From the NCBI GenBank assembly GCA_965202585.1, contig OZ241829.1:61566001-61630000 (forward strand): a DNA stretch of 64,000 nt, written 5' to 3'. A program made the translations under genes and the position numbers. Of the stretch, positions 12,918 to 41,862 are shown piece by piece. Position 1 is the stretch's first letter. Each line of letters begins with the position of its first letter. The DNA is from Thalia democratica. Taxonomy: Eukaryota. The notes beneath the pieces were generated by a model, which made no database searches, was not told the DNA's origin, and saw nothing but the letters and a program-made list of their open reading frames with translations.

Positions 12918-15900
12918 ATGATGAGTAGAGCAACTTTTGTTACAAATGCAAGTAAGTGGAAAACAGGTAGTAACTTTCCCTTGAAGGGTTTATACACATA
13001 TGATGGAACAGTTTTAAACGATGATGAAAGTGTTCAAAAAAGAGATGGCTATACTTTTCCACTACCTAAAAAAGATCAGTCAGGTTTGTTTTACATTTTC
13101 GTTGTTTATTATAGAGTCTTCTAGATCAAAATGCTGGATCTTGCCACAGCTTACCAAGACCTAGATCTGACCAGATTTTAATTTAAAAAAAATTGATGTT
13201 AATCAGGTTTCTGCTAGATCTTGAAGATCATCTTGATTAAAAAAGGTCTATGTTGTTCTGGTTAGACTTCATTTAAATTTGAAAATCATATTTGGTCAAA
13301 CTTACTGTTAAATTAGGCTTTGTCATATCATTTTTCTACATTAAGACTTAAACTGAAGCAGTAGAATCATTTTTATTAATAAATGTTTAGCAGGAATAGG
13401 GTTTAAACTATTGTGAAATTAAGATGAGGCTAGATCTGGCGTTTTAATCTGGAGAACTTTAGCTCAATATTCTAAATTATATTTACTCCTAAGTCAAACT
13501 TGTTTAAAATTATGATACAGTGTGTATGATTTATTAAATCTTTTGCTAATTTAAAAGTTAAAAATGTAAAAAAAAAAACACTTCAATAGCTAGAGCATAT
13601 TAAAATATAATAAAACCAAAATTTCTTTTTAATTATTAACAAGAGACCAATGGAGTTCAGAAAAAAAACATTGTATTTTATATTAAAGCTTGAACTTTGA
13701 ACTACAAGTAACTTTTTACAGCTTAAATGTAAACAAATATATTCTGTAAGATGTATCCAGTTTAAAAAAGTTTTACAAATGCAGGATAGGCTGTCAAGCG
13801 GAAATTTAGTTTAGTGATGACTAAAAAATCAACCAATTGTATAGAGTTCCCATTTCCCTTGAATTTTTTTATTGTCATAAGAATAAAAGAATTATGAAAA
13901 TTCCTAAATTTTACGTTTTTGCTTAGCACTGGAGGATTTTGTAATGAAATGTCAGGTATTTTCTTAGTTTTATAAACTCAGACTAACTCATGGTAGTTTT
14001 AAGGCCATAGGGGAGGGGGGGTAAAATACTTTTTTTTTAATTAACTTTGGTTTTTATATGAAAGCTTTAATTACAAACTATAAGCCAGTTTTTATAGAAT
14101 TCAATAATATCATTTAACTTTTGAGATATTTTATTTTTTGTAAAAAGTTTCTAATTTATAGACCAGAAATTTTTCAGGGTCAATTTTCATGGGAATTTTA
14201 AAAATCACTAAAAATCTATCTCCTTTATTTTTCAAGCAATCTTCTTCAAATGTTCAGGAAATGTTCCTTATACTAAAAGAAAAAGCGTTACTTATGACTT
14301 TTGATAATTAAAAAAAATATATTTTATGACAAAAATTAAAAAAAAAGTATTTTTTTCTCAAAGTAAAAATATTTTTACTTCAAATTTTTTAAATTCACAA
14401 GTAATGTTTTTTTATTGTATAAAGATTAGACTGTGAAAGTTTGAAGAAGATTGCTTCAAAAATGTAGGAGGAGATAGATTTTAAACAAACTAGTTTTTTT
14501 TTGCTGTATTAGTTTTCACTTCCCATAGAAAGCGTATTATACAGCCCGACTAAGCTTATTCAAAATTCTAAAAAATAACATTAATCTGCAGGCAGTACGT
14601 TGTCTACCATTAATCACTAGAATACTACTCCTGAAGGTAGTTTAATAATGTCCTTAGTGTATAGTCTACATTATATGCTCTAAATTATATAAAAACTGTC
14701 ATAAAGACTGTTAAACATCAAACTTTATTCTATAATAGTAATTTTGGTAACTATAATGAAACACAGTAAGTCAACTTATAAATTGATAATAGAAATAAGC
14801 TAAGAAGAGAATGAACAGTATCTTAATATAGTTGTTCTCTAACACCATCTAGCTTTTTTTTTTGCTTTCTCTAGATTTTTGCTAGTTATCATTTAATTCT
14901 CTAGATTTTTTGTAATTTGGTTGGAACCCTGTATTTTATTTTGTTTATAAGCTGTCTTTTAAGTACAATGTTCTAATATAAACATAATAAACTATAAAAA
15001 TTTATATTTTTCATGTCATAGGCTATAAAAACTCTTCTAATATGAACCAAAATTTACTTTACTTTTAAAAATTAAAAACTGTCATAGAAAATTAACTTTA
15101 AATTATCATTTGTTCAAACTTTAAGAATAATTAAATGGAAATAAAAACATTTAAAGAGTTTTATAGAACAAACTGTTGCAATACACTTTCCTGTCACAAT
15201 ATAGTTTTTTAAATAATAAAAACTGTAGAGTAAAAATGAACTGGAATAATTAAATATATAACTAATAAATTATTTTTATATGTGCCAAACAGGAAACTTG
15301 TTCTTCAGTGACGCACCAGAATTTTGTCCAAACCTGACGCCAAAGCAAATGATACAAATGGGCAGTTTCGGAGCCACTTACTTCCGTCCAATCAACTCAA
15401 GCGTGACTGGTTTGAGGTACGACCGAATGTGGGAGGAACTTCCACAAAACTGGCTCGAAGGCAAACATCACAGGTTTGAAGTTTGTTAGTAAAACTCTAG
15501 CATAAGTTAATAACAACATTTTAAAGTGCTTTTGTAGTGTTGATTAGAAAGTTTTTAATGGTTTCTTGTATTTTATCAACCTTTGGAGTTGTGTTGTACT
15601 GAGATATAGCAGGGTCTTTAGTGTCGCTTATTTATATGCAATTTTTTATACAAAGCTTAAAATAGTTTTATGATTGTCATCAAAATATAATTGAGGTTGT
15701 AATACAATAAAACAAGTAACATGTTACAAAACAAAACTTTATAGTAGACACAATTAGAATTCTTAGGTTTTTATATAAACATCTGGGCTGAATGTTTTGA
15801 ATATTTTTTGTGTGCTTATTAGTTCAAGTACATCTTTTACAGTTTTCATTGTAGGTTACAAATTTTTGTACTGAGTTTTAACCATAATCCAAAATTAACT

Positions 15901-18900
15901 CTACAGACACAAAATGACTTATAATGTTTTGCATTTATCTTTGATTGTTTAAAACATAGTTAGTAATGCAGAATATTATAATTATATAATTTTAAAGCTT
16001 TTTTATTTAAGCAAGGATTTATTTTTTACAGGGATTTGGTGTCTTCAACAAAGTACAAGGCGAATTGTAATAAGTTCAAGCGGCCAGTTGGAGGTTCCTT
16101 GGACATGTGGGAGGGTAAGGGATGGATCAAAGAACAAGATCCTTACGGATGGTTTCACTGGTACTGCAGGTAACTCAAATAATAGTTTTGTTCTATTTAG
16201 AATTCAATGTGAAAAGTTTCTTAAAATCAGAATTATTATTATTAACTGATGTTTTTATTAAGGTTTAAAACTTTGTTTTTATGTTTCTTTCAGTTATAAA
16301 TTATTTCGAAATTCATATCTTTTGCATTATAACTTCTAGCCTTTAGTTATTGTTATGGATTAGTTTTTTAAATGAAGTTTACATAAAACTTTCCTTTTTT
16401 TTGCCTATTTTTATCAGCACTTCAAAGTATTTACTAAAAGTCCATCTCTTAAATTTTTTTAAAGTTGTTTACCTCAAATGTTTATATTGTATAATAAGAA
16501 ACAGTAAAAGCAAACTTGGTGACAAAAATAATAAGAAAATATATTTTTTCAGGGTTGCCACAAGGTCAGGAAATCAGGATAAGTCAGGAAAAAATGGGAT
16601 TTTTCAAAAAAAAGTCAGGAAAAGTTAGGAAATTTGACAAAATTAAAAAAAAATCAGATTTTGTCAGTTTAAATTTACAAAATTCCTTATTTTCCAAAGC
16701 CTTCAAATGGTAAAAAAAATTAATTAAAAATTCTTTAAAGTCAGACTAAAATTGCAAAATTTTCCTATAAATTTACAAAATTAATTAGGTTCCAATGCCT
16801 TCATCTGGTATAAATAAATAAAATATTCTTTATAAAACTGCAAAATTTTTCTATTAACATATTGAACAACTACCCTACTTGAAAAAGCAGTTTTTGTAAG
16901 CTTTTAAGTATTGATGATCTGTAGCAAGGAAACTTCCATAATTAAACTGTGATATATGTATACATAAAAGTTTATCTAGCATAAGTTTAGAACCTAAGTG
17001 TTTTTTGTTTAAGTAAATAATTGAGGTAGCAAAATTGGAGGTAAAATTTAATGAGTGCAAAAGTAATAATAGGAATGAAGCCCACAAATTGTGGCTAGAT
17101 TTAGATATAAGATTCTCTTCGACAAGTGTAGGGGCAGCAGATGAGAACGATTTAAATAAAATGAGGCAAATGGTTTTAACTGCTAAGAAAATGAAGCATG
17201 ATGCAGACCAGATGAAGGAAAAATCATTAGATGAAAAGGTTGAAGTGCTAATAAAAAAACAGAGAAAATAAATTTTAGTACATATAATTAAATAAAAAAC
17301 AGTATATGATTAGGTTCTTTATTCTTTGAAGGTTTTATTTGTAAAAGTCCGTTATTGTCTTAAGGTGTTAGTTGTGAAAGTTGGTTATTAATTAAAGGTT
17401 TTAATTGTAAAAGTTCCTTATATGTCGTTTTGTTTATTTAGATACAATTATGTAAGGAAATGCTAAAAAAATGATTTTTTTCAGACAAGCTGTGTTTATA
17501 AGGTAATAATACAAGTATTTTGCTCATAGAGCTGTTTATTGCAAATACATCAATCATACACAGGTGGTTCAAGTGATGTAATGGAAGTTTGATGACTGAA
17601 TTCAACAAAAAAAACTGTTGTTTTAACCTGTATTAAAATTAGATTTAAAGCTTTATATAGTTTTAAGTGTTAGATTATGTATTTTAGAACAAGTTTACAT
17701 TAAGAGTTTGAGTTAGAAAAGTCAAGAAAATTTTAGTAAAAAGTCAGGAAAAGTCAGAAAACTTGATCTGTGGCAACCCTGTTTTTAAAAAAAAAAAAAA
17801 AAAATTCTTTTAGAAACTATAAAATCCCTTTTATACAGATTGTTTTTAACTTAATTAAAATTAGACTACAATAAATTAAAAACTCATGTTCAAAAACTGT
17901 AGGAGGAGATGTATTTTATTTGAAATGATTTTTTTAAGCTTTTTAATTATTGCCTTTTACAGGGAACATTTTGAGCTATTTAACCTTAATAAACTATTCA
18001 AACCACTTAAATTCAGTAACGCGCTGGTTTTGGGTGAGTTAGTTTTGAGTGTTGAGTTGATAACATGTTAATTGCTTGCAAGCGTTGTGTTCGCATCGTA
18101 CTTTTGTACGATGGCGACTGTTCTTTTATGAACTTTTGAATTAAAGTAGCTTATTTTGTGTCTTTCAGTCAGCAGTTGTTGTATTTTGATCGCAGTTTTT
18201 ATACATTGTAAATATACCTTTGTTTCTAAGACTCGATTTCTTTACATACAATTAGTTTAAGCATTCTAACAATCTAACTACTTAATTAGGCTAAGCTCAA
18301 ATGATAGTCTAAGTCAATTCGCATTTCATTATCGACTAAGCTAAATAACTTAGCTAAGTCATTTCTAAACAGTTAGGTAACCGTCACCGATATTGTTATA
18401 GCGCGTTAAGTCAGTTAATATCTAGGTTCGCGTGTACAAGTAACAATCAACATCGTGTGAACGGCAAATTGCTATACTTCAGTTTAACGTTCTAAGTATG
18501 TTTTTTTTATTACGTATTTATACATGTTTCAAAGTAGATTAATTTAATAATAGTTGAATTATCGTGATGCAATAAAATGTACGTTGTGACGTCACAACAG
18601 GTACTACCTGGGAAGGAGGAGTGAGGACGACGCGAGGCAGATCAAGAGGTGGGTGAACTTCACCGGCGCCAGGGGAAGGTGGAAGATATCGATTGTGAGG
18701 GAAGTGGAAAAGCATCAAGGTTTTTGAAATTTGTTGATATATAGGGGTTTCGTTATAAACAAGAACCATTTGCAACTTAAAATCACTAAATTTTTATAAC
18801 AAGTTTGTTGATTATTAAAATGTTTTTGTGGTTTGCAGAAGGCGTAGTTTTATTTTTAAAGTCATGAATATTTTATTCTCTTATCTATTGTAGTATGTTT

Positions 18901-20999: not shown

Positions 21000-22607
21000 C
21001 AGGGTTGCCACTCGGTCAGGAAATCAGGAAAAATTAAAAAAAATGACAAAAGTCAGGAAAAAATGGGGGGTTTTGAAAAAAGCCAGGAAATTTGATAAAA
21101 TTAAAAAAAAAAGTCAGATTTTGTCAGTTTAAATTTACAAAATTCCTTGCTTTCCAAAGCCTTCAAATTAATTAAAAATCCTTTAAAGTCAGAAAAACAT
21201 ACAAAAATTTTCCTAGAAATTTACAAAATTATTTAACTTCCAATGCCTTCATCTGGTATGAATTAGTAAAATATCCTTACAAAACTACAAAAATTTTCTA
21301 TTAACATATTGAACGAAAGACCTTCTTGAACAAGCAGATTTTGTAAGCTTTTTAGTAATGATGATCTGTAGTAAAAACACTTTCATAGTGAAATTGTGAT
21401 ACATACAAAAAGTTTATCTAGCATAATTTTAAAATCAAAGTGTTTTTTGTTTAAGTAAATAATTGAGTTCTTTATAACTAAGCAGTTAGTTTTTTATGTA
21501 AGAAGTTAATGAGTATACTTTACCTCTTTATAATTTTTTCAAAGTTGTTTAAATTTATAAAATAAGTTTTAAGAGAGGTATATGCCAAAATTAAGTTCAT
21601 TTGTATTTTTTGTAGAGTAACTTAAGTTTTTAAAGTAAATAAGAGTATATTTATTTGTCACAAATTTTATACTAAATGATAAAAGGAAGTGTTTTATAAA
21701 TGAAAGTAAAAATAAATGAGTGTCAAAAGAAAAGAAATGAAGCCCACAAGTTGTAGCTTGATTTAGAGAAAAAATTATCTTCAACAAGTGTAGGGTCAGC
21801 AGATGAGAGCGATTTAGATAAAATGAGGCAAATGATTTTAATTGCCAAGAAAATGAAGCGGAATGCAGTTCAGATGAAGGAAACCATATCTTCATAAGAT
21901 GAAGAGGTTGAAGTGCTTATAAAAAACGGATAAAATAAATTTTAGTACATACATTTAAAAAAAACAGTATTTGATTAAGTTCTTTAATGTTTTAACTGTA
22001 ATAGTTCGTTATTGTTTTAAGGTTTGAGTTGTAAAAGTTCCCTATTGATTTAAGATTTTAATTGTTAAAGTTCCTTATATGTCGTTTCGTTTATTTAGAT
22101 ACATTTATGCTAGGAAATTCTAAAATATTGTGTTCTTTATTGTTTTAAGGTTTCAACTGTAAACATTTGTTATTGTTTTAAGACTTTAGTTGTGAAAGTT
22201 CGTTATTAATTCAAGGTTTTAATTTTAAAAGTTCCTTATATGTCGTTTGTTTATCTAGACACATTTATGCTAGGAAATACTAAAAAATTGTGCCTTTTAT
22301 TAGACAAGTTGTGTTTTAAGGTAACACTACAAGTATTTTGCTGATAGAATGTTTATTACAAACATTAATCATACACAGATGGTTTAAGTGATGTACTGGA
22401 AGTTTGATGATAGAATTCAGCAAAAAAAAACTGTTGTTTTTAACCTGTATTAAAATTAGTTTGAAAGCTTTATATAGTTTCAAGTGTTAGATTATGTATT
22501 TTAGAATAAGTTTAATTTAAGAGTTTGATTTAGAAAAGTCAGGAAAATTTTGGTAAAAAGTCAGGAAAAGTCGAAAATTTTTCTCAGCTTGATCAGTGGC
22601 AACCATG
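21000..22607. mobile_element. non-autonomous DNA transposon, family A, second copy
   Basis: CAGGGTTGCCAC...GTGGCAACCATG; collinear with 16550-17781 plus an internal tandem duplication of about 160 bp near 21980-22295. Confidence 0.85.
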
Positions 22608-30151: not shown

Positions 30152-31264
30152 ATGTCTTGTAAGCGTGGTAAACACGAAGAAACACTGTCAAAGGAATTGC
30201 TTGACATCATTTTAAAGGAGATCAAAAACTCAAAAGAGTCTAGTTGTGACAGCATGGCTGTTGACAGCTCAGACTCGGAGGATGAAACTATCCACAAGGA
30301 CGAAATCGTTATGCCTGAACCTGCTAAGAAGCCGCCATCGGAAACAATAAGTCCATTAGAAACAATAAAGTCAATTTCACAAATAAATGATTCTAATTTT
30401 TACCAAAACAATTGGTTCACAAACAAAAATCAGAACAAGTTTTCAACTCCAGGAGAAATTAGAGCCATGGTAAAATCTGTCGGCTATCAGAACTCGATGT
30501 TAACTTCTAATTCTGCTTACGCAAAAGAAAACATAAGGACCTTTGATTATCCCAGAAGTAATAACAAAGATAAAAAACTAAAAACTTCTTACCTAGAAGA
30601 TGTCATTTTTAAATTGGACAAGTGCTCAGGAAAGGTTAAGAAGGAAAACAATACAGTTTCGCCAGGGGTTGAAACTTTAAAAAATCTAACTCGAGCACTA
30701 AAATATAAAAGTAACCGAGGGTCTAAAACTGAAAACAGTACAAATTTAAGCCTTGTCCAAGAAAAAGAAGTCAATAAACAAAACGAAGAAAGATCTGTAG
30801 CTACTAAAATTACGCAGTCATCCGGAAATTCATTCGAAAACAAAAACTTCCTAAACAATTGCTGCAAACCTGAAAAAGGAGATTCCATGTCAAGCCCGGC
30901 GTCGCGAGACAACGTGCAGCCGTGCATAGTCGTGTCTTTGAAGGAAATTCTCGAAAACTTTCACGAAAAGTCCGAAAAGCAAACACAGACGAACGTCGGT
31001 CCGATAAAACTGAGCAAAGCTTGCGCGGCAGAGTCGAGGGAATTGAGACTGTCCATGAACAACAACATGCTGTTTCCTACGGCAAAGACGATGAGCCAGG
31101 AAGGGGAAAAGAAAGCGAGCAAGAGAAGGTACAGGAAGAGCATAAGGCAGCCTGCGGGTCTCGCTTCTGTGGTTTGGTCTTTCGTGACCGGAGCTTCAAT
31201 GACTAATATCCTTTATGAGGATAAACCGCTTTCAGTTTGCTCCTCTCGTAATAAATGCTCATGA
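30152..31264 (+). CDS. single-exon orphan protein, 370 aa, S/K/N/E-rich and probably largely disordered
   Basis: 1113-nt ATG-to-stop ORF in otherwise stop-rich AT DNA, with elevated GC; no family recognised. Confidence 0.7.
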   Translation: MSCKRGKHEETLSKELLDIILKEIKNSKESSCDSMAVDSSDSEDETIHKDEIVMPEPAKKPPSETISPLETIKSISQINDSNFYQNNWFTNKNQNKFSTPGEIRAMVKSVGYQNSMLTSNSAYAKENIRTFDYPRSNNKDKKLKTSYLEDVIFKLDKCSGKVKKENNTVSPGVETLKNLTRALKYKSNRGSKTENSTNLSLVQEKEVNKQNEERSVATKITQSSGNSFENKNFLNNCCKPEKGDSMSSPASRDNVQPCIVVSLKEILENFHEKSEKQTQTNVGPIKLSKACAAESRELRLSMNNNMLFPTAKTMSQEGEKKASKRRYRKSIRQPAGLASVVWSFVTGASMTNILYEDKPLSVCSSRNKCS

Positions 31265-31917
31265 AAAATTAACTTTATAACTAATAAGTTGCTTAAAATT
31301 TTTGCAGTTATAAATTTAAGCGTAATTTAACCTTTTTTATCGCTTAGAACTTATAGTTGCTTTTTACATGAGTAGCAGTGATAATAACACAAAATATTTT
31401 TTTTAATTAGTTAGTTTTTAGTAATTAAAGTAAGAGTAAAACTAGTTTTTACAAATATTTTTGAATAATATTAAACTGTTATTATATGGAAGATTTATTT
31501 TGAATAAAATAGTTTTTGGTTATAATCAATATTTTTTTGATTTAAGGCTACGAGAACTTTTTAAGAAAGCATAGATATCTTAAGCTTTAAAACTATTACT
31601 TGACCTAAAATTTTTAGTTTGTCAAAAAATATTTTTTATGATAAGTAATAACTAAAATAAGGTTTTGTCCAAATTATAAACAAAAAAATTCAAAGTTTTA
31701 TTTTGTTTTTAACTACTAAATAGGAAGTTTAGTATTCGATCTTAGCGAATAAATTCTATTAAATAAAGCTCAAGGAAAAAAAAATCTTTAATGTTTTTTA
31801 ATCATACTAAAATAGTTTTTAAAAACTTAAAAATCTCTAAGTAGAGCAAGCTATGTTTTACTTTTGTAACGTTAAATAAACGCATAGTGTTATCAAGCAT
31901 TTCAATGTTATTCAAAA

Positions 31918-32421
31918 TAAATATCAAGAGTTTAAGACAGTTTAAATTTATAGACAGTTTAAATTTACAATTAAATCTCTTATGTGAGAACCAAAAAGAA
32001 GGATTTTGCGTTATGTAGTTCTATATAGCTAAAGTAAGAGATTTAACAAGTAAAATAGCACAACGCAAAATCCTTCTTTTTGGTTCTCACATAAGAGATT
32101 TAATTGTAAATTTAAACTGTCTATAAATTTAAACTGTCTTAAACTCTTGATATTTACTGATTGATGATTACAAAAATTAAAAAAAAAAAAATTTTTATAA
32201 GATTTTTTATAGTGAACTTAATTTGGATTGACCATTTTTATAAACCACTTTAGAATAAGCCTTTATGTAGTTCTATATAGCTAAAGTAAGAGATTTAACA
32301 AGTAAAATAGCACAAAGGCTTATTCTAAAGTGGTTTATAAAAATGGTCAATCCAAATTAAGTTCACTATAAAAAATCTTATAAAATTTTTTTTTTTTTTA
32401 ATTTTTGTAATCATCAATCAG
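31918..32421. repeat. two abutting long palindromes sharing an identical 49-nt loop
   Basis: Arms 31918-32012 / 32062-32156 (95/95 complementary) and 32157-32264 / 32314-32421 (107/108). Loops 32013-32061 and 32265-32313 are identical. Confidence 0.97.
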
Positions 32422-32593
32422 TTTTTTAAAAGTTAATAGTCACAAAAAGAATATTCGTAAAACAATTTTTATACTAATTTTAAAATTATTTAAAGACTAC
32501 TATTTCAAATAACTTCGCTTAAAACTGTGTTGAACGGGTACTTTCGTTATAAAAAAGAACTTTTTTTTTGATTAAAAGTAAATTAAGAAGGAT

Positions 32594-34848
32594 TTAAACT
32601 CGTGACCTTTTCATCATAACATCGTCAACCGCAGTTCCTATTTCCTCGGGGTGCAAACTGACGTGAAACGATTCGAACACGGAATCTTTCACGTTGCTCG
32701 CCGGAGCCATTTCAAAATTTTCCTTCGGACTCGTCGCGGTGCTGCTGACACTCGCTTTTGTCTTCTTGGTGAAAACTGTGCTGCTCACAATTTCAGAGGT
32801 GCGTATTTTTTCGATGACAAAAGAAAAGCCAAGCTTTTTGGACACTTGCGCCATTATTTCGTAAACGTTGTTTCGGAACTTGACGTTTTTCACGTTGTAT
32901 ATCAAAAAGTTCCAGATGGTCGCGCACGTCAAGCACACGTAGCCTACAAACTCCAACGAATAAAGCGCTAAAAAACTTTCAAGGTCCAGGCTACGCGGCT
33001 TGTACAGGCTCAAGTTCGGTGTTGCTATGGTGGCTATTATAACAACGATCAACGGCAAAGTCATCAATGAAAAAGCCGTGACCATTTGAATCAAAGTCTT
33101 CGCCAGCTCGACCTCAATGTTACGAGGTTTTTTGTCCGATCTGGATTTCTTGCTGTGAAGACGCTTGGTTTTTCGTGTGTGCTTTCTGGTGTAACAAAAC
33201 GTGGCGATGCTCGTACCGATCATCAGCAGAAAAGGCAGGCCCAACACAACGATGTACACCGTCTCCGCCTCGAAGCCGGCCATCGTGAAAAGGGCGCCGA
33301 AGAACACGGCGTACAAAAGAGAAGGCTTCGTATAAAGCGGCAGCGTGGCCACGAACACGCAAAACAGCCAGACCGCCGCGCACGCCCGCTTCGATATTTG
33401 CTTCGTGTTCAGCGTGCGGTAGGTGAAGGGGCGGGCGACCGCGAAGAGGCGGTCAGCAGCGGCCAGCAGCAACGTGTAGAGGGAAGCCATCAGGCAGGTG
33501 AAGTAGACGAAGCCGAAGAATTCCACGTAGCTCTTGCTGTAAACGTCTATGAATCTCGAAAACAAAAAAGACTCGTTTTTACCGAAATTAACTTCTTTGA
33601 TAGCGAAAGGAGACCTTGTCAAGCTCAGCAAGTTGTAAAGTATCGACGGTATGACCACAACCGCGTAAATGACGTCGGCGATTGCAAGCGATACTTTGAA
33701 GCTTGATTGGCTGTTTTGCAAGGACTTTTTCTTGCAAGTGACCAGAATCACGAGTGTGTTCATCAGCAGTGAAGCTACTCCGACGACTACGTGAAACGCG
33801 GCTAGTGCCCGGATGTTTGTTTTGCAACTGAAAAGCAAATTTGGAAATACTATTTGATTTATAATGGTCTAATAATTTAAAATACATTTATTACTTTAAG
33901 AAAAACTACAGTTGTTAAAACACACTTTAGTTTGTACGTTTGTTGTGTAAAATTTACAATGAAGCTAATTAAAAATGTGCTATCACTGCTTTTTTTATTT
34001 AGCTGTTTAAAGCTAAAAAGCGTTATTTTAAAATAAACTACTTAAGCATCTGTTTTAAAAAAGTAACATTATTCAGCCTTGTAAAAATAATTACTGCCAC
34101 TTAAATAAGCGTGAATAGTGCGTAAAATAGTTTTGAATAAACTGATAAGTCACATAAGTAACACAAGCAAAAACATTACATTTTTCAATTTAGTGAAGTT
34201 ATACGTTCAGTCGAAAACAAACTAATTATTAAAAATGATAAACAACCTTTGAGGAGCACAGTCCCAGTATGAAAGCCCAACATTTGCTACATTTTTGTTA
34301 TGAAACCCACACCAAACTATCGGACACATTGGAATATCGAGACTCAACACTTCTACAAAACTTTCAGCTCCGAACCTGTAAAAACTGTTTACTGCGACGC
34401 ATGAGTCCTTTAAAAAAGGTTGCTTTGATGACAAGCTTTTGCTAGACATATTATCTTTAACACTGCACGTACTGTTAAAACTGTCCGGGTCACAGACTGA
34501 CAAATAAGCCTTTTCGGACAGATCATTAAAGTTGAAAGTTTTTAAGCTGCATTCGTTGTCGATTTGCTCGCTGCAGTTCCACGATTTTAGCAGGTTCAAA
34601 TACCTTAACAGCTGCATTTTGTATCTCCACGAGCACTCGAAGGCTTTTGTGAGGTTTTTGCAGCATGACTCGTTCTGAGGTAGGATCTGACCAACTTTGA
34701 TGTAAGGACAGTTTACTTCATACTTACATACGGAAGTGTTGAAGAGACTCTCAGCGTTTAGAACGGTTGTTGTGTTTTCGTCACTTGAAACGGTTGCTAC
34801 ACACAAAATTGCAAATGTTATTATTTTTAAATAAACAAATATTTTCAT
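32594..34848 (-). CDS. class A (rhodopsin-like) GPCR with signal peptide and an about 200-aa Cys-rich N-terminal ectodomain; 2 exons, about 611 aa
   Basis: Exon 34848-34247 joins 33827-32594 in phase 2 (..WDCAPQS|CKTNIRAL..). Seven hydrophobic segments with TM1 N (LMNTLV), TM2 SLAIADV, TM3 ADRLFAV, TM4 W, TM6 FSLMTLP, TM7 NFLIY. Confidence 0.9.
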
Positions 34849-35266: not shown

Positions 35267-35692
35267 GGGTGCACGACTATTCAAATTCGGACAATTCAAA
35301 TTCCGACAATTCAAATTCTTAATAAAAGATTAAAACGACTAAAAATAAAAAAGTAATGTGTATTTGACTTAAATAAAAAATACATATGTAAATCATATTA
35401 ATATCTACAGGCCATTTTTTTCTTTTTGCAAAACATTAAATATTTTTTGAGATATGGCTTATATAAAGTAAAAAAACATAGTTATTTTTAGTAATTTTAA
35501 AATATCTTGAAAAGTATTTTAGAGTTTGAAAAAAAAAAAAAAAAATGGCTTTAGATATTATTAAGATCTACATATGTATTTTTTATTTTTTTCAAATTTA
35601 TATTACTTATTGAGATATAGTGCTTTTAATATTTTTTTAAGAATTTGAATTGTCGGAATTTGAGTTGTCCGAATTTGAATAGTCATGTAACC
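35267..35692. mobile_element. Mutator (MULE)-type foldback MITE
   Basis: Long imperfect TIRs starting GGGTGCACGACTATTCAAATTCGGACAATTC and ending GAATTTGAATAGTCATGTAACC; 9-bp TSD TAATATACT at 35258-35266 and 35693-35701. Confidence 0.88.
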
Positions 35693-39886: not shown

Positions 39887-41456
39887 TTTTTATCGAGTAA
39901 TCTATAAGGATAAAAGATAAGCGTATTTTATACTTAAAAATACTACTATCAATTCCCTTTCATAAGTTCCAAAATAAGTCGTTTTACATCGAAATAACTT
40001 TGATTTTTGAAGTTTAATTTAAAATAAAATACAAAATAAAATATAATTAGCTATTAATGAATAATAAGTATAAATACATAATGAATAACTAATAAGTATT
40101 TACAAGTTTGTACTTTTAATACTGTTATCGAACTTGAATAAAATGTTGTCAGATGAAAAGTAAACTATGTAAAGTATATAAGAATTAAGAACTACATCTA
40201 AACTTAAATTTAATATGTTTTGATAAAATCAAAAGTCTTGTTGGTAACGTGTTGTTAACATTTTCGCCTAAATGAGTTCTTTTCACTCAGTAAAATTAAA
40301 TAGTTTTAATGTGTTATTAATTCACACTTAAGTTAACATATATAAACTTATAGTTATACATGTTTTTTTCAGTTTCAACTGAAAAGTCGCGTCAGGTGGC
40401 GCAAAAGAGACAAAATATTTTACAATTGGTATCTAAGTTTTGAATTTTAAACAAATTAGTTATTAATATTAGTTCAAGAAAAGTTTTAGTACACATGACA
40501 AGAATTTAATGTTTAATTTCAAATACGCATTTTAAGTGAAATGAAATAAACTATTTAGATGTAAACAGACAACCTATTTATGTTTTTGCACCAACAAATA
40601 ATCTCATAAAAGAAAAGCCATGGTATATGAAGATCGTTTTTAACAATTAAATGACAGTATAAATTTTGATAGAAAACTGTATTATTAAAATACTGAAACT
40701 TTTTTGCAAATTTCTTTAAAGAAATATTTTAAGTATTTACACTAAATAAATTCAATAATTTTAAACTTATTGACTTATAGGCAAAAACTAGTTTGTCTAG
40801 ATCTAGAACTCTATTTCAAACTTAGTTTTTCAAATTTCTCAGAAAAAAGTATTAAATCATTAGTTTCCGTCAAAAAGTAATACAATCTAATTTAATCAGA
40901 TAAAAATATACATTTCAAATGTGTATTTAAACATAAACTAGTGTATTTAGCACTGATAAAACTTTAAAAAAAGTTTAACTTTTTTGTTTGTAAATAACTA
41001 ATTGCAACAAGTTCTGTAATATAAAAGAGCTGGTAGTTTTTTTATTCAAACCTTTTATTTTAAATACGTTACAGTAAAAGTAAACATAAATTTTGGGTTG
41101 CCTTCAGTAAGTAAAACAAAGTGAAACTTTCTAACACGGATTCTAAATTATGATTTGTTTAAAACAATCGGCAGTTTTTATAATGTTGACTTTATATCTA
41201 CTTAATTAATTTTTTAGCACATTTTTATAACAGCCGTTTTTGTACCTAAATACTAAATAAGACTGACGCAGTTTCACTATCTATTGGATATTAAAAAATA
41301 CTCGAAATCAGACAACTTTTGAATTATTTTTGTTAAACTAAAAATACTTCAACAGCTTTTACATTACACTTTTTTATGTAATGAAATATATTATTTTTAT
41401 TAAGGTTTAAACAATAAATTTCTAGAGAGCTTCACACTTAAGGAGCCTTTATAAAA

Positions 41457-41664
41457 TTAAGACAAAAGTTAAATTGAGTTTATTACTTAACAATTGTTTC
41501 ACGCTAAAGCGATCATCACAAGTAAAAAAGTAAACAACATAAAAAAAACTATATATTGTGTTTGTCATTTGCAACTTGTTAGTTTGTATACTTTTTTACT
41601 TGTGATCATCGCTTTAGCGTGAAAAAATTGTTAAGTAATAAACTTAATTTAACTTTTGTCTTAA
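41457..41664. repeat. long imperfect palindrome
   Basis: 76-nt arms 41457-41532 / 41589-41664 with 3 mismatches and a 56-nt loop. Confidence 0.9.
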
Positions 41665-41862
41665 CTGTACGTTATTTTCAACCTTAACTTTGACGTTTAG
41701 TAAATAAATACTAAAAATATTATTTTATTTGAAATATCATGCTGTGATATTGTAATTTAAAATGTTTACGTATGTAGCAACTGAGTTATAGAAATTGATG
41801 TAGGTCAAACATACCTTTTATTTTAAGTATATAGGTAAAAAATACCTTTTATTTTTAGTATT

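What the first reader, a model, noticed from the sequence alone, without database searches (positions are those of the whole stretch)
31918..32421. Twin perfect palindromes with different arms but an identical 49-nt loop: A-S-A'-B-S-B'
Seen: hairpin 1 has 95-bp perfect arms and hairpin 2 has 108-bp arms with one mismatch. They abut exactly at 32156/32157, and both loops are ATGTAGTTCTATATAGCTAAAGTAAGAGATTTAACAAGTAAAATAGCAC, each framed by TT...AA. A 12-mer of the loop (TAAGAGATTTAA) is also inverted in arm A (31971-31982). The structure lies about 170 bp past the GPCR stop codon, between convergent genes. Inference, two testable models: (a) a very recent template-switch event, formally a tandem duplication of A-S-B' followed by inversion of the segment between the two S copies; (b) S is a tiny mobile or recombinogenic module that creates inverted duplications of its flanks, an undescribed palindrome-generating system. 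Either way, a transcript would carry two long dsRNA stems (siRNA, ADAR or decay substrate) in the GPCR 3' region.
Basis: partly seen in the sequence, partly recalled or inferred. Interest (0 to 1): 0.85.

Follow-up and report, generated by a model that had tools for sequence, protein, structure and literature searches.

The report
Young duplication-plus-inversion variant forming twin hairpins
The twin palindromes are real, but they are one allele of a heterozygous rearrangement (a 252-bp duplication whose middle 301 bp is inverted) of an ordinary single-copy sequence, and the shared loop follows from that geometry rather than from a mobile palindrome-making module.

Summary
The order is A (31918-32012), S, A', B, S, B' (to 32421). 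Arms A/A' match 95/95. Arms B/B' match 107/108. The two 49-nt loops are identical, and the hairpins abut at 32156/32157.

Contigs from public runs show what it is. The likely source sample (X1, X2) holds all three rearrangement junctions (A|S, A'|B, S|B') at roughly half the flank depth. It also holds a simple allele. A second individual (X3) and a marine metagenome (X5) show only the simple allele, L-A-rc(S)-B'-R (252 bp, here U), in which S is inverted relative to the window.

The window allele equals U+U with 301 bp inverted, from the start of S in copy 1 to the end of S in copy 2 (503/504 identity). Any inversion with one breakpoint in each copy of a tandem duplication gives twin abutting palindromes with identical loops, so no S module is needed. 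S, A and B are single-copy by depth. Junction microhomology is 2, 1 and 2 nt.

My reading is a very young complex structural variant made by replication template switching or break repair. Transcription into dsRNA is untested. Interest is modest.

The parts
31918..32012 (+). Arm A, in the native orientation of the ancestral allele U
   Evidence: The X3 contig runs unbroken from the left flank through A.
32013..32061 (+). S copy 1 (loop of hairpin 1), inverted relative to the ancestral allele
   Evidence: Junction A|S is carried by X2 record 6 (31977-32040, depth 51).
32062..32156 (+). Arm A', the inverted copy of A (95/95)
32156..32157 (.). Junction A'|B. It is the reverse complement of a B'|A tandem-duplication junction and has 1 nt of microhomology.
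   Evidence: 59-nt junction contigs in X1 (record 2, depth 38) and X2 (record 8, depth 44). Microhomology.
32157..32264 (+). Arm B, the inverted copy of B' (107/108; mismatch at 32192)
32265..32313 (+). S copy 2 (loop of hairpin 2), identical to copy 1
   Evidence: Junction S|B' is carried by X2 record 12 (32263-32343, depth 63).
32314..32421 (+). Arm B', in the native orientation of the ancestral allele U
   Evidence: The X3 and X5 contigs read A-rc(S)-B'.
32013..32313 (.). The 301-bp segment that is inverted relative to a tandem duplication of U
   Evidence: U+U with this segment inverted reproduces the window at 503/504 positions.
32594..33838 (-). Rhodopsin-family GPCR ORF; its stop codon lies 173 bp from the structure
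   Evidence: (PF00001, E = 1e-22).
32397..32402 (-). First ATTAAA on the GPCR strand after the stop codon. It lies inside arm B', so the mRNA may end before the loops.
   Evidence: This is a motif scan only, with no RNA data.

Best explanation
The window shows the derived allele (W) of a heterozygous complex structural variant. The ancestral allele (U) is 252 bp of single-copy intergenic DNA, L-A-rc(S)-B'-R. W is U duplicated in tandem (junction B'|A, 1 nt of microhomology), with the 301 bp from the start of S in copy 1 to the end of S in copy 2 inverted (junctions A|S and S|B', 2 nt of microhomology each). An inversion with one breakpoint in each copy of a tandem duplication always produces two abutting palindromes. 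Their loops are the same sequence, namely the 49-bp offset between the two breakpoints in unit coordinates. The identical loop is therefore a by-product of the geometry and not an active element.

Shown here: the structure itself, its three junctions in read-derived contigs, the simple allele in three sources, and single-copy depth.

Inferred: the direction U to W, and the mechanism. I think the most likely mechanism is replication-based template switching of the MMBIR/FoSTeS type (three switches), or a tandem duplication followed soon by an inversion. Simple cut-and-paste of one or two chromatids cannot supply two S copies that each keep one native neighbour unless there are four breaks.

The nearly perfect arms mean the event is very recent. 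No function is implied. The allele is probably neutral or mildly unstable.
For: Structure.

Junctions in sample S1: A|S is in X2 record 6 at depth 51. A'|B is in X1 record 2 and X2 record 8 at depth 38-44. S|B' is in X2 record 12 at depth 63. X1 flanks have depth 59-67, so the junctions sit at roughly half the flank depth. A-only contigs have depth 131-141, about three copies, as expected for W (2 copies) plus U (1 copy).

Simple allele:
- X2 record 10 reads B-S(32273 C>T)-A' with a T run one base shorter at 32004-32007.
- X3, a different sample, has one unbroken 411-nt contig L-A-rc(S)-B' with the same C>T change.
- Metagenome X5 has a 151-nt contig A-rc(S)-B' with C at 32273 and the T4 run, which is the progenitor type of W.

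Formal relation and generality: (503/504 identity; the simulation holds for arbitrary breakpoints; microhomology 2, 1 and 2 nt). U has no unusual fold (-31 kcal/mol against -36 for shuffles). In U, S shares a 12-mer (direct repeat) with the neighbouring arm A, so it looks native to the locus.
Against: W was seen in only one sample, which is probably the one the assembly came from. Its support is therefore independent of the assembler but not of the specimen. The evidence is k=31 contigs, which cannot span a 53-nt shared segment, so the order of the junctions rests on the assembly itself. Absence of W in X3 (7x depth) and X5 (3x) is inferred from unbroken contigs. There is no outgroup, so polarity rests on parsimony and on the perfection of the arms. 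The number of events, one or two, cannot be decided. No UU intermediate allele was seen. X1 carries a contig B-S(C)-A' that in a W/U(T) diploid must be a graph walk across the two S copies; alternatively the sample holds a third allele.
Confidence: 0.78

Rival explanations
1. W is ancestral and U derives from it by palindrome collapse. Recombination between the arms flips each loop, and recombination or slippage between the two direct S copies then deletes A'-B-S.
For: All three steps could use perfect homology (95, 108 and 49 bp), and long palindromes are known to be unstable. No outgroup was available.
Against: Direct collapse of W gives A-S-B', not the observed A-rc(S)-B', so two extra loop flips are needed. 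U occurs on at least two distinct haplotypes (C/T4 and T/T3) in three sources. W's arms differ at only 1 of 203 positions, while local diversity between samples is about 0.4-1%.
Confidence: 0.08
2. W is a technical artefact, either an assembly error or an amplification or long-read chimera, and the specimen carries only simple alleles.
For: Amplification chimeras are typically short inverted duplications with tiny junction microhomology. W is seen only in sample S1, and the library types of X1 and X2 are not on record.
Against: All three junctions appear as contigs in the runs of sample S1, at about half the flank depth: A'|B in both X1 and X2, A|S and S|B' in X2. A-arm depth fits three copies. 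Flank depths are even. A chimera present in individual reads would not reach such depth.
Confidence: 0.05
3. S is a small mobile or recombinogenic module that induces inverted duplication of its flanks.
For: The two loops are identical, framed by TT..AA, and have weakly inverted ends (ATG...CAC).
Against: S-containing contigs have depth that fits 2-3 copies per diploid genome. There is no other copy in the 64-kb window at up to 3 mismatches. A 40-mer and a 23-mer of S are absent from the metagenome contigs, and the 40-mer is also absent from the viral contigs. S sits at the same locus without palindromes in X3 and X5. The identical loops follow from geometry.
Confidence: 0.04

Closest known systems
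Template-switch mutations (four-point model: Loytynoja and Goldman 2017, PMC5453318; hairpin and miRNA birth: PMC8794818, PMC10710096)
   Same: Perfect inverted repeats and hairpins are created at once from local sequence. Inversions and combinations of inverted and direct repeats are among the known outcomes. The junctions are tiny, and the ancestral and derived states can be compared directly.
   Different: A single excursion (two switches) from U cannot give W, because the two inverted pieces (S-A' and B-S) are not contiguous in U. W needs three junctions or a duplicated template. The arms here (95 and 108 bp) are also longer than typical short template-switch events.
Small inverted triplications (SIT; Lei et al. 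2026, PMC13334657) and ODIRA inverted triplications (PMC10766183)
   Same: The scale is the same: about 150-bp segments, spacers of tens of bp, and two palindromic junctions with loops. [quoted passage not shown]
   Different: SIT and ODIRA carry three copies of one segment (DUP/IN/DUP) with two different spacers and inverted-repeat junctions of about 6 bp. Here every segment is present twice, the arms differ between the hairpins, the loops are identical, and the junction microhomology is 1-2 nt.
CNV-flanked inversions such as dupINVdup (Collins et al. 2017, PMC5338099)
   Same: A complex SV with at least three linked junctions that combines duplication and inversion. Such variants are attributed to MMBIR/FoSTeS or to simultaneous repair of several breaks.
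   Different: dupINVdup is a + rc(abc) + c, with a single inverted middle segment. W is a + rc(s b a s) + b, in which the middle segment is also duplicated. W is also about four orders of magnitude smaller than the variants catalogued there.
Foldback or MITE-type inverted-repeat elements
   Same: Long inverted arms around a short spacer. Older examples occur in the same window (35267-35692 and 41452-41669).
   Different: W is single-copy, has no target-site duplication or terminal motif, has perfect arms, and has a non-palindromic allele at the same site.

Membership tests
Complex SV: tandem duplication with an inversion across the duplication junction | The net gain equals exactly one unit of the ancestral sequence. 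| tested here: met
   W is 504 bp, twice the 252-bp U.
Complex SV: tandem duplication with an inversion across the duplication junction | One duplication junction plus two inversion junctions, with all other adjacencies native. | tested here: met
   U+U with 301 bp inverted reproduces W at 503/504 positions. Each of the three junctions was seen in contigs.
Complex SV: tandem duplication with an inversion across the duplication junction | The ancestral unrearranged allele exists at the same locus. | tested here: met
   Contigs reading L-A-rc(S)-B' or A-rc(S)-B' in X3, X5 and X2 record 10.
Single-excursion template-switch mutation (four-point model) | The derived sequence equals the left part, plus the reverse complement of one contiguous ancestral stretch, plus the right part. 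| tested here: not met
   The inverted material (S-A'-B-S) is contiguous only in a duplicated or circular U, not in U itself (reasoning checked).
Small inverted triplication / ODIRA | Three copies of one segment with the middle copy inverted, and two different spacers. | tested here: not met
   A, S and B are each present twice. The arms differ between the hairpins and the loops are identical.
Small inverted triplication / ODIRA | Short inverted repeats (about 6 bp) at the strand-switch junctions. | tested here: not met
   Only 2 nt (TT/AA), or 5 nt if one mismatch is allowed.
dupINVdup | The middle segment is single-copy and inverted, and only the flanks are duplicated. | tested here: not met
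   S, the middle segment, is present twice.
Mobile element (MITE, foldback or novel S module) | Multiple copies in the genome. | tested here: not met
   Depth fits single-copy sequence. No other copy in the window. No matches in the metagenome or viral collections. A whole-genome search was not possible.
Mobile element (MITE, foldback or novel S module) | Target-site duplication and terminal inverted repeats at the element ends. | tested here: not met
   The flanks ...TCAAAA | TAAATA and ...ATCAG | TTTTTT show neither a target-site duplication nor terminal inverted repeats.
miRNA / hairpin-RNA gene | Match to a curated RNA family at its gathering score. | tested here: not met
   Only sub-threshold generic hairpin hits, for example MIR7996 at 59.9 bits against a threshold of 119.
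miRNA / hairpin-RNA gene | Transcription and processing into small RNAs. | not testable with these tools
   No RNA-labelled run holds the structure, and both read-laying runs were already used.

The most novel reading that the evidence does not exclude
W may be a caught-in-the-act intermediate of a general 'duplicate, invert, collapse' route. A one-step replication accident, for example two converging nascent strands swapping templates 49 bp apart, would build twin palindromes. Recombination between the two direct loops would then collapse them to A-S-B', leaving a clean short inversion with no inverted repeats to explain it. The same tendency might underlie the many palindromes that first-stage notes report elsewhere in this genome.
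Probability: 0.1. Interest if true: 0.55.

Novelty: new member of a known kind. Interest (0 to 1): 0.3.

Why it matters
The finding removes a claimed new palindrome-generating system. It also gives a simple rule: twin abutting palindromes with identical loops are the signature of an inversion that spans a tandem-duplication junction. Both the ancestral and the derived allele sit in one specimen, which makes this a clean natural example of two roughly 100-bp perfect hairpins appearing at once next to a gene's 3' end. That is the raw material proposed for new hairpin-RNA genes, and it is also a likely fragile site. It predicts a specific decay product, an S-flipped simple allele, that could be looked for in populations.

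Tried and rejected
- I searched for S elsewhere. The window at up to 3 mismatches gave only the two known copies. Metagenome contigs gave 0 hits with a 40-mer and with a 23-mer. Viral contigs gave 0 hits.
- blastn of U against the window found only AT-rich 12-16-mers and an unrelated repeat that shares a 16-mer.
- The Rfam scan gave only sub-threshold generic miRNA-hairpin hits.
- I considered and rejected a SMRTbell or hairpin-adapter read-through. S is as AT-rich as the genome, it is native to the locus in other samples, and it is supported at half depth.
- I rejected piggyBac-type TTAA insertion of S, because there is no duplicated TTAA.
- I rejected homologous integration of a circle into U, because no shared segment h allows it.
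- I rejected single-excursion template switching, SIT and dupINVdup, because their topologies do not match.
- Break-and-rejoin of two sister chromatids would need four breaks within 252 bp, so I judged it unlikely.
- An RNA-run search for transcription returned no RNA-labelled run.
- Run X4 (organism B) holds 40-52% of the sampled words, but nothing informative could be laid.

Full report
**1. Observation.**
- A (31918-32012) is the perfect reverse complement of A' (32062-32156), 95/95.
- B (32157-32264) and B' (32314-32421) match at 107 of 108 positions. The one mismatch, at 32192, lies where an A13T5 run faces an A14T4 run.
- The two hairpins abut at 32156/32157.
- The 49-nt loop S occurs twice (32013-32061 and 32265-32313), identical and in the same orientation. 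With its TT..AA frame it forms a 53-nt direct repeat.
- No further copy exists in the 64-kb window at up to 3 mismatches, and none is expected by chance.
- The 12-mer of S that is inverted in A at 31971-31982 is also there.
- As RNA the 504 nt fold into two full-length stems at -309 kcal/mol, z = -55.

A rhodopsin-type GPCR ORF lies on the minus strand at 32594-33838, so the structure ends 173 bp past its stop codon. The '+' ORF to the left (30152-31264) has no Pfam match.

**2. Is it real, and what are the alleles?**
Ten public runs hold the region. I laid Logan contigs (k = 31) on it twice.

In sample S1 (runs X1 and X2, probably the assembly's specimen) every rearrangement junction has its own contig:
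- A|S: X2 record 6, 31977-32040, depth 51.
- A'|B: 59-nt contigs in X1 (depth 38) and X2 (depth 44), starting at 32127.
- S|B': X2 record 12, 32263-32343, depth 63.

X1 flanks have depth 59-67. A-only contigs in X2 have depth 131-141, about three copies.

The same sample also holds a contig B-S-A' in which S carries 32273 C>T and the T run at 32004-32007 is one base shorter (X2 record 10, depth 55). This is a simple allele on a different haplotype.

A second specimen (X3, 7x depth) gives one unbroken 411-nt contig. It runs from the left flank through A, then rc(S) with the same C>T change, then B'. It does not break at the start of A, and X3 has no A'|B contig.

A marine metagenome (X5) gives a 151-nt contig A-rc(S)-B' with C at 32273 and the T4 run. 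That is the haplotype type from which the window allele must have come.

The specimen is therefore heterozygous. One allele is the twin palindrome (W). The other is a simple 252-bp allele U = A-rc(S)-B'. U is the form seen in the other sources.

Caveats:
- k = 31 contigs cannot bridge the 53-nt shared segment, so the order of the junctions rests on the assembly.
- Contigs show presence better than absence.
- W is documented in one specimen only.
- The X1 contig B-S(C)-A' must be a graph walk across the two S copies, unless the sample holds a third allele.

**3. Formal relation.**
Take U+U and invert the 301 bp from the first base of rc(S) in copy 1 to the last base of rc(S) in copy 2. The result matches the window at 503 of 504 positions.

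The same script shows that this is general. An inversion with one breakpoint in each copy of a tandem duplication always yields two abutting palindromes with different arms and identical loops. The loop is the offset between the two breakpoints in unit coordinates. It is inverted relative to the ancestor when the second breakpoint lies further along the unit than the first, as it does here.

The feature that made the finding look special therefore needs no special element.

Relative to U, W has three novel adjacencies. Their microhomologies are 2 nt (TT), 1 nt (A) and 2 nt (AA).

**4. Mechanism (inferred).**
Each S copy in W keeps one native neighbour (S-A' and B-S). All of A, S and B' are doubled. 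Cut-and-paste would therefore need four breaks on two sister chromatids within 252 bp.

Copying is more economical. It could be one replication-based event with three template switches of the MMBIR/FoSTeS type. It could also be a 252-bp tandem duplication followed soon by an inversion. The data cannot separate these two.

The 1-in-203 arm divergence is far below the 0.4-1% differences seen between samples over the same region. The event is therefore very recent.

U itself folds no better than shuffled sequence, so no pre-existing hairpin guided the event. The inverted-repeat character of the S ends is only TT/AA, or 5 nt with one mismatch.

**5. Rivals.**
- *W ancestral with collapse to U.* This would need two loop flips plus a deletion, because direct collapse gives A-S-B' and not the observed A-rc(S)-B'. 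It would also have to place U on at least two haplotypes. I give it about 0.08.
- *Technical artefact.* This is unlikely because the junctions have half-flank depth in the runs of sample S1 (A'|B in both X1 and X2). I give it about 0.05.
- *Mobile or recombinogenic S.* S-containing contigs have depth that fits 2-3 copies per diploid genome. S is absent elsewhere in the window and in the metagenome and viral collections. It sits at this locus without palindromes in other samples. In U it shares a 12-mer (direct repeat) with the neighbouring arm A, so it looks like local sequence. I give it about 0.04.

**6. Comparison with known kinds.**
- *Template-switch mutations* create perfect hairpins, inversions and mixed repeats in one step (PMC5453318, PMC10710096). 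The process is closest in spirit, but a single excursion from U cannot give W.
- *Small inverted triplications* (PMC13334657: DUP/IN/DUP of 148/160/148 bp, 30-bp spacers, 6-bp junctions) and *ODIRA* (PMC10766183) match in scale and in having looped palindromic junctions. They have three copies of one segment and two different spacers, so W is not a member.
- *dupINVdup* (PMC5338099) keeps the middle segment single-copy, so it does not fit either.

W is best filed as a small complex structural variant: a tandem duplication with an inversion across its junction. All defining features of that class were met here.

**7. Function.**
Nothing shows a function. Rfam gives only sub-threshold generic hairpin hits. 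No RNA-labelled run holds the structure.

On the GPCR strand, the first ATTAAA after the stop codon lies inside B' at 32397-32402. The mRNA may therefore end before the loops. This comes from a motif scan only.

The dsRNA, siRNA and ADAR ideas remain untested. Long perfect palindromes are expected to be unstable. Recombination between the two direct S copies would leave A-S-B', an apparently clean 49-bp inversion, and that prediction can be tested in populations.

**8. Verdict.**
- Model (b) is not supported.
- This is a real, young, heterozygous rearrangement of an ordinary kind, with a neat geometric explanation for its odd look.
- Interest is about 0.3.

Noticed in passing
window 35267-35692: A foldback with 208-nt arms that are 76% complementary and a 10-nt spacer. 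Its ends carry short tandem GACAATTCAAATTC-like repeats. It looks like an older MITE or foldback element.
   Followed up: no
window 41452-41669: An inverted repeat with 94-nt arms that are 90% complementary and a 30-nt spacer. It is an older hairpin-forming inverted duplication or a MITE.
   Followed up: no
window 16645-17760 and 21105-22577: A segment of at least 1.1 kb is duplicated in direct orientation about 4.4-4.8 kb away, at 82-95% identity and with indels. It shares only a 16-mer with arm A.
   Followed up: partly
window 31500-32900 (run X4, organism B): A run labelled as a different organism holds 52% of the sampled words of the region and 40% of those of the structure. Only fragments of 33 nt or less could be laid, because a filter drops some contigs. 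Which allele it carries is unknown.
   Followed up: partly
window 32004-32007 and 32273: Two linked variants mark the simple allele in sample S1 and in X3: a T run one base shorter, and C>T in S. They would serve as phasing markers.
   Followed up: yes
window 14220-14470: A weak inverted repeat with 64-nt arms that are 75% complementary and a 123-nt spacer.
   Followed up: no
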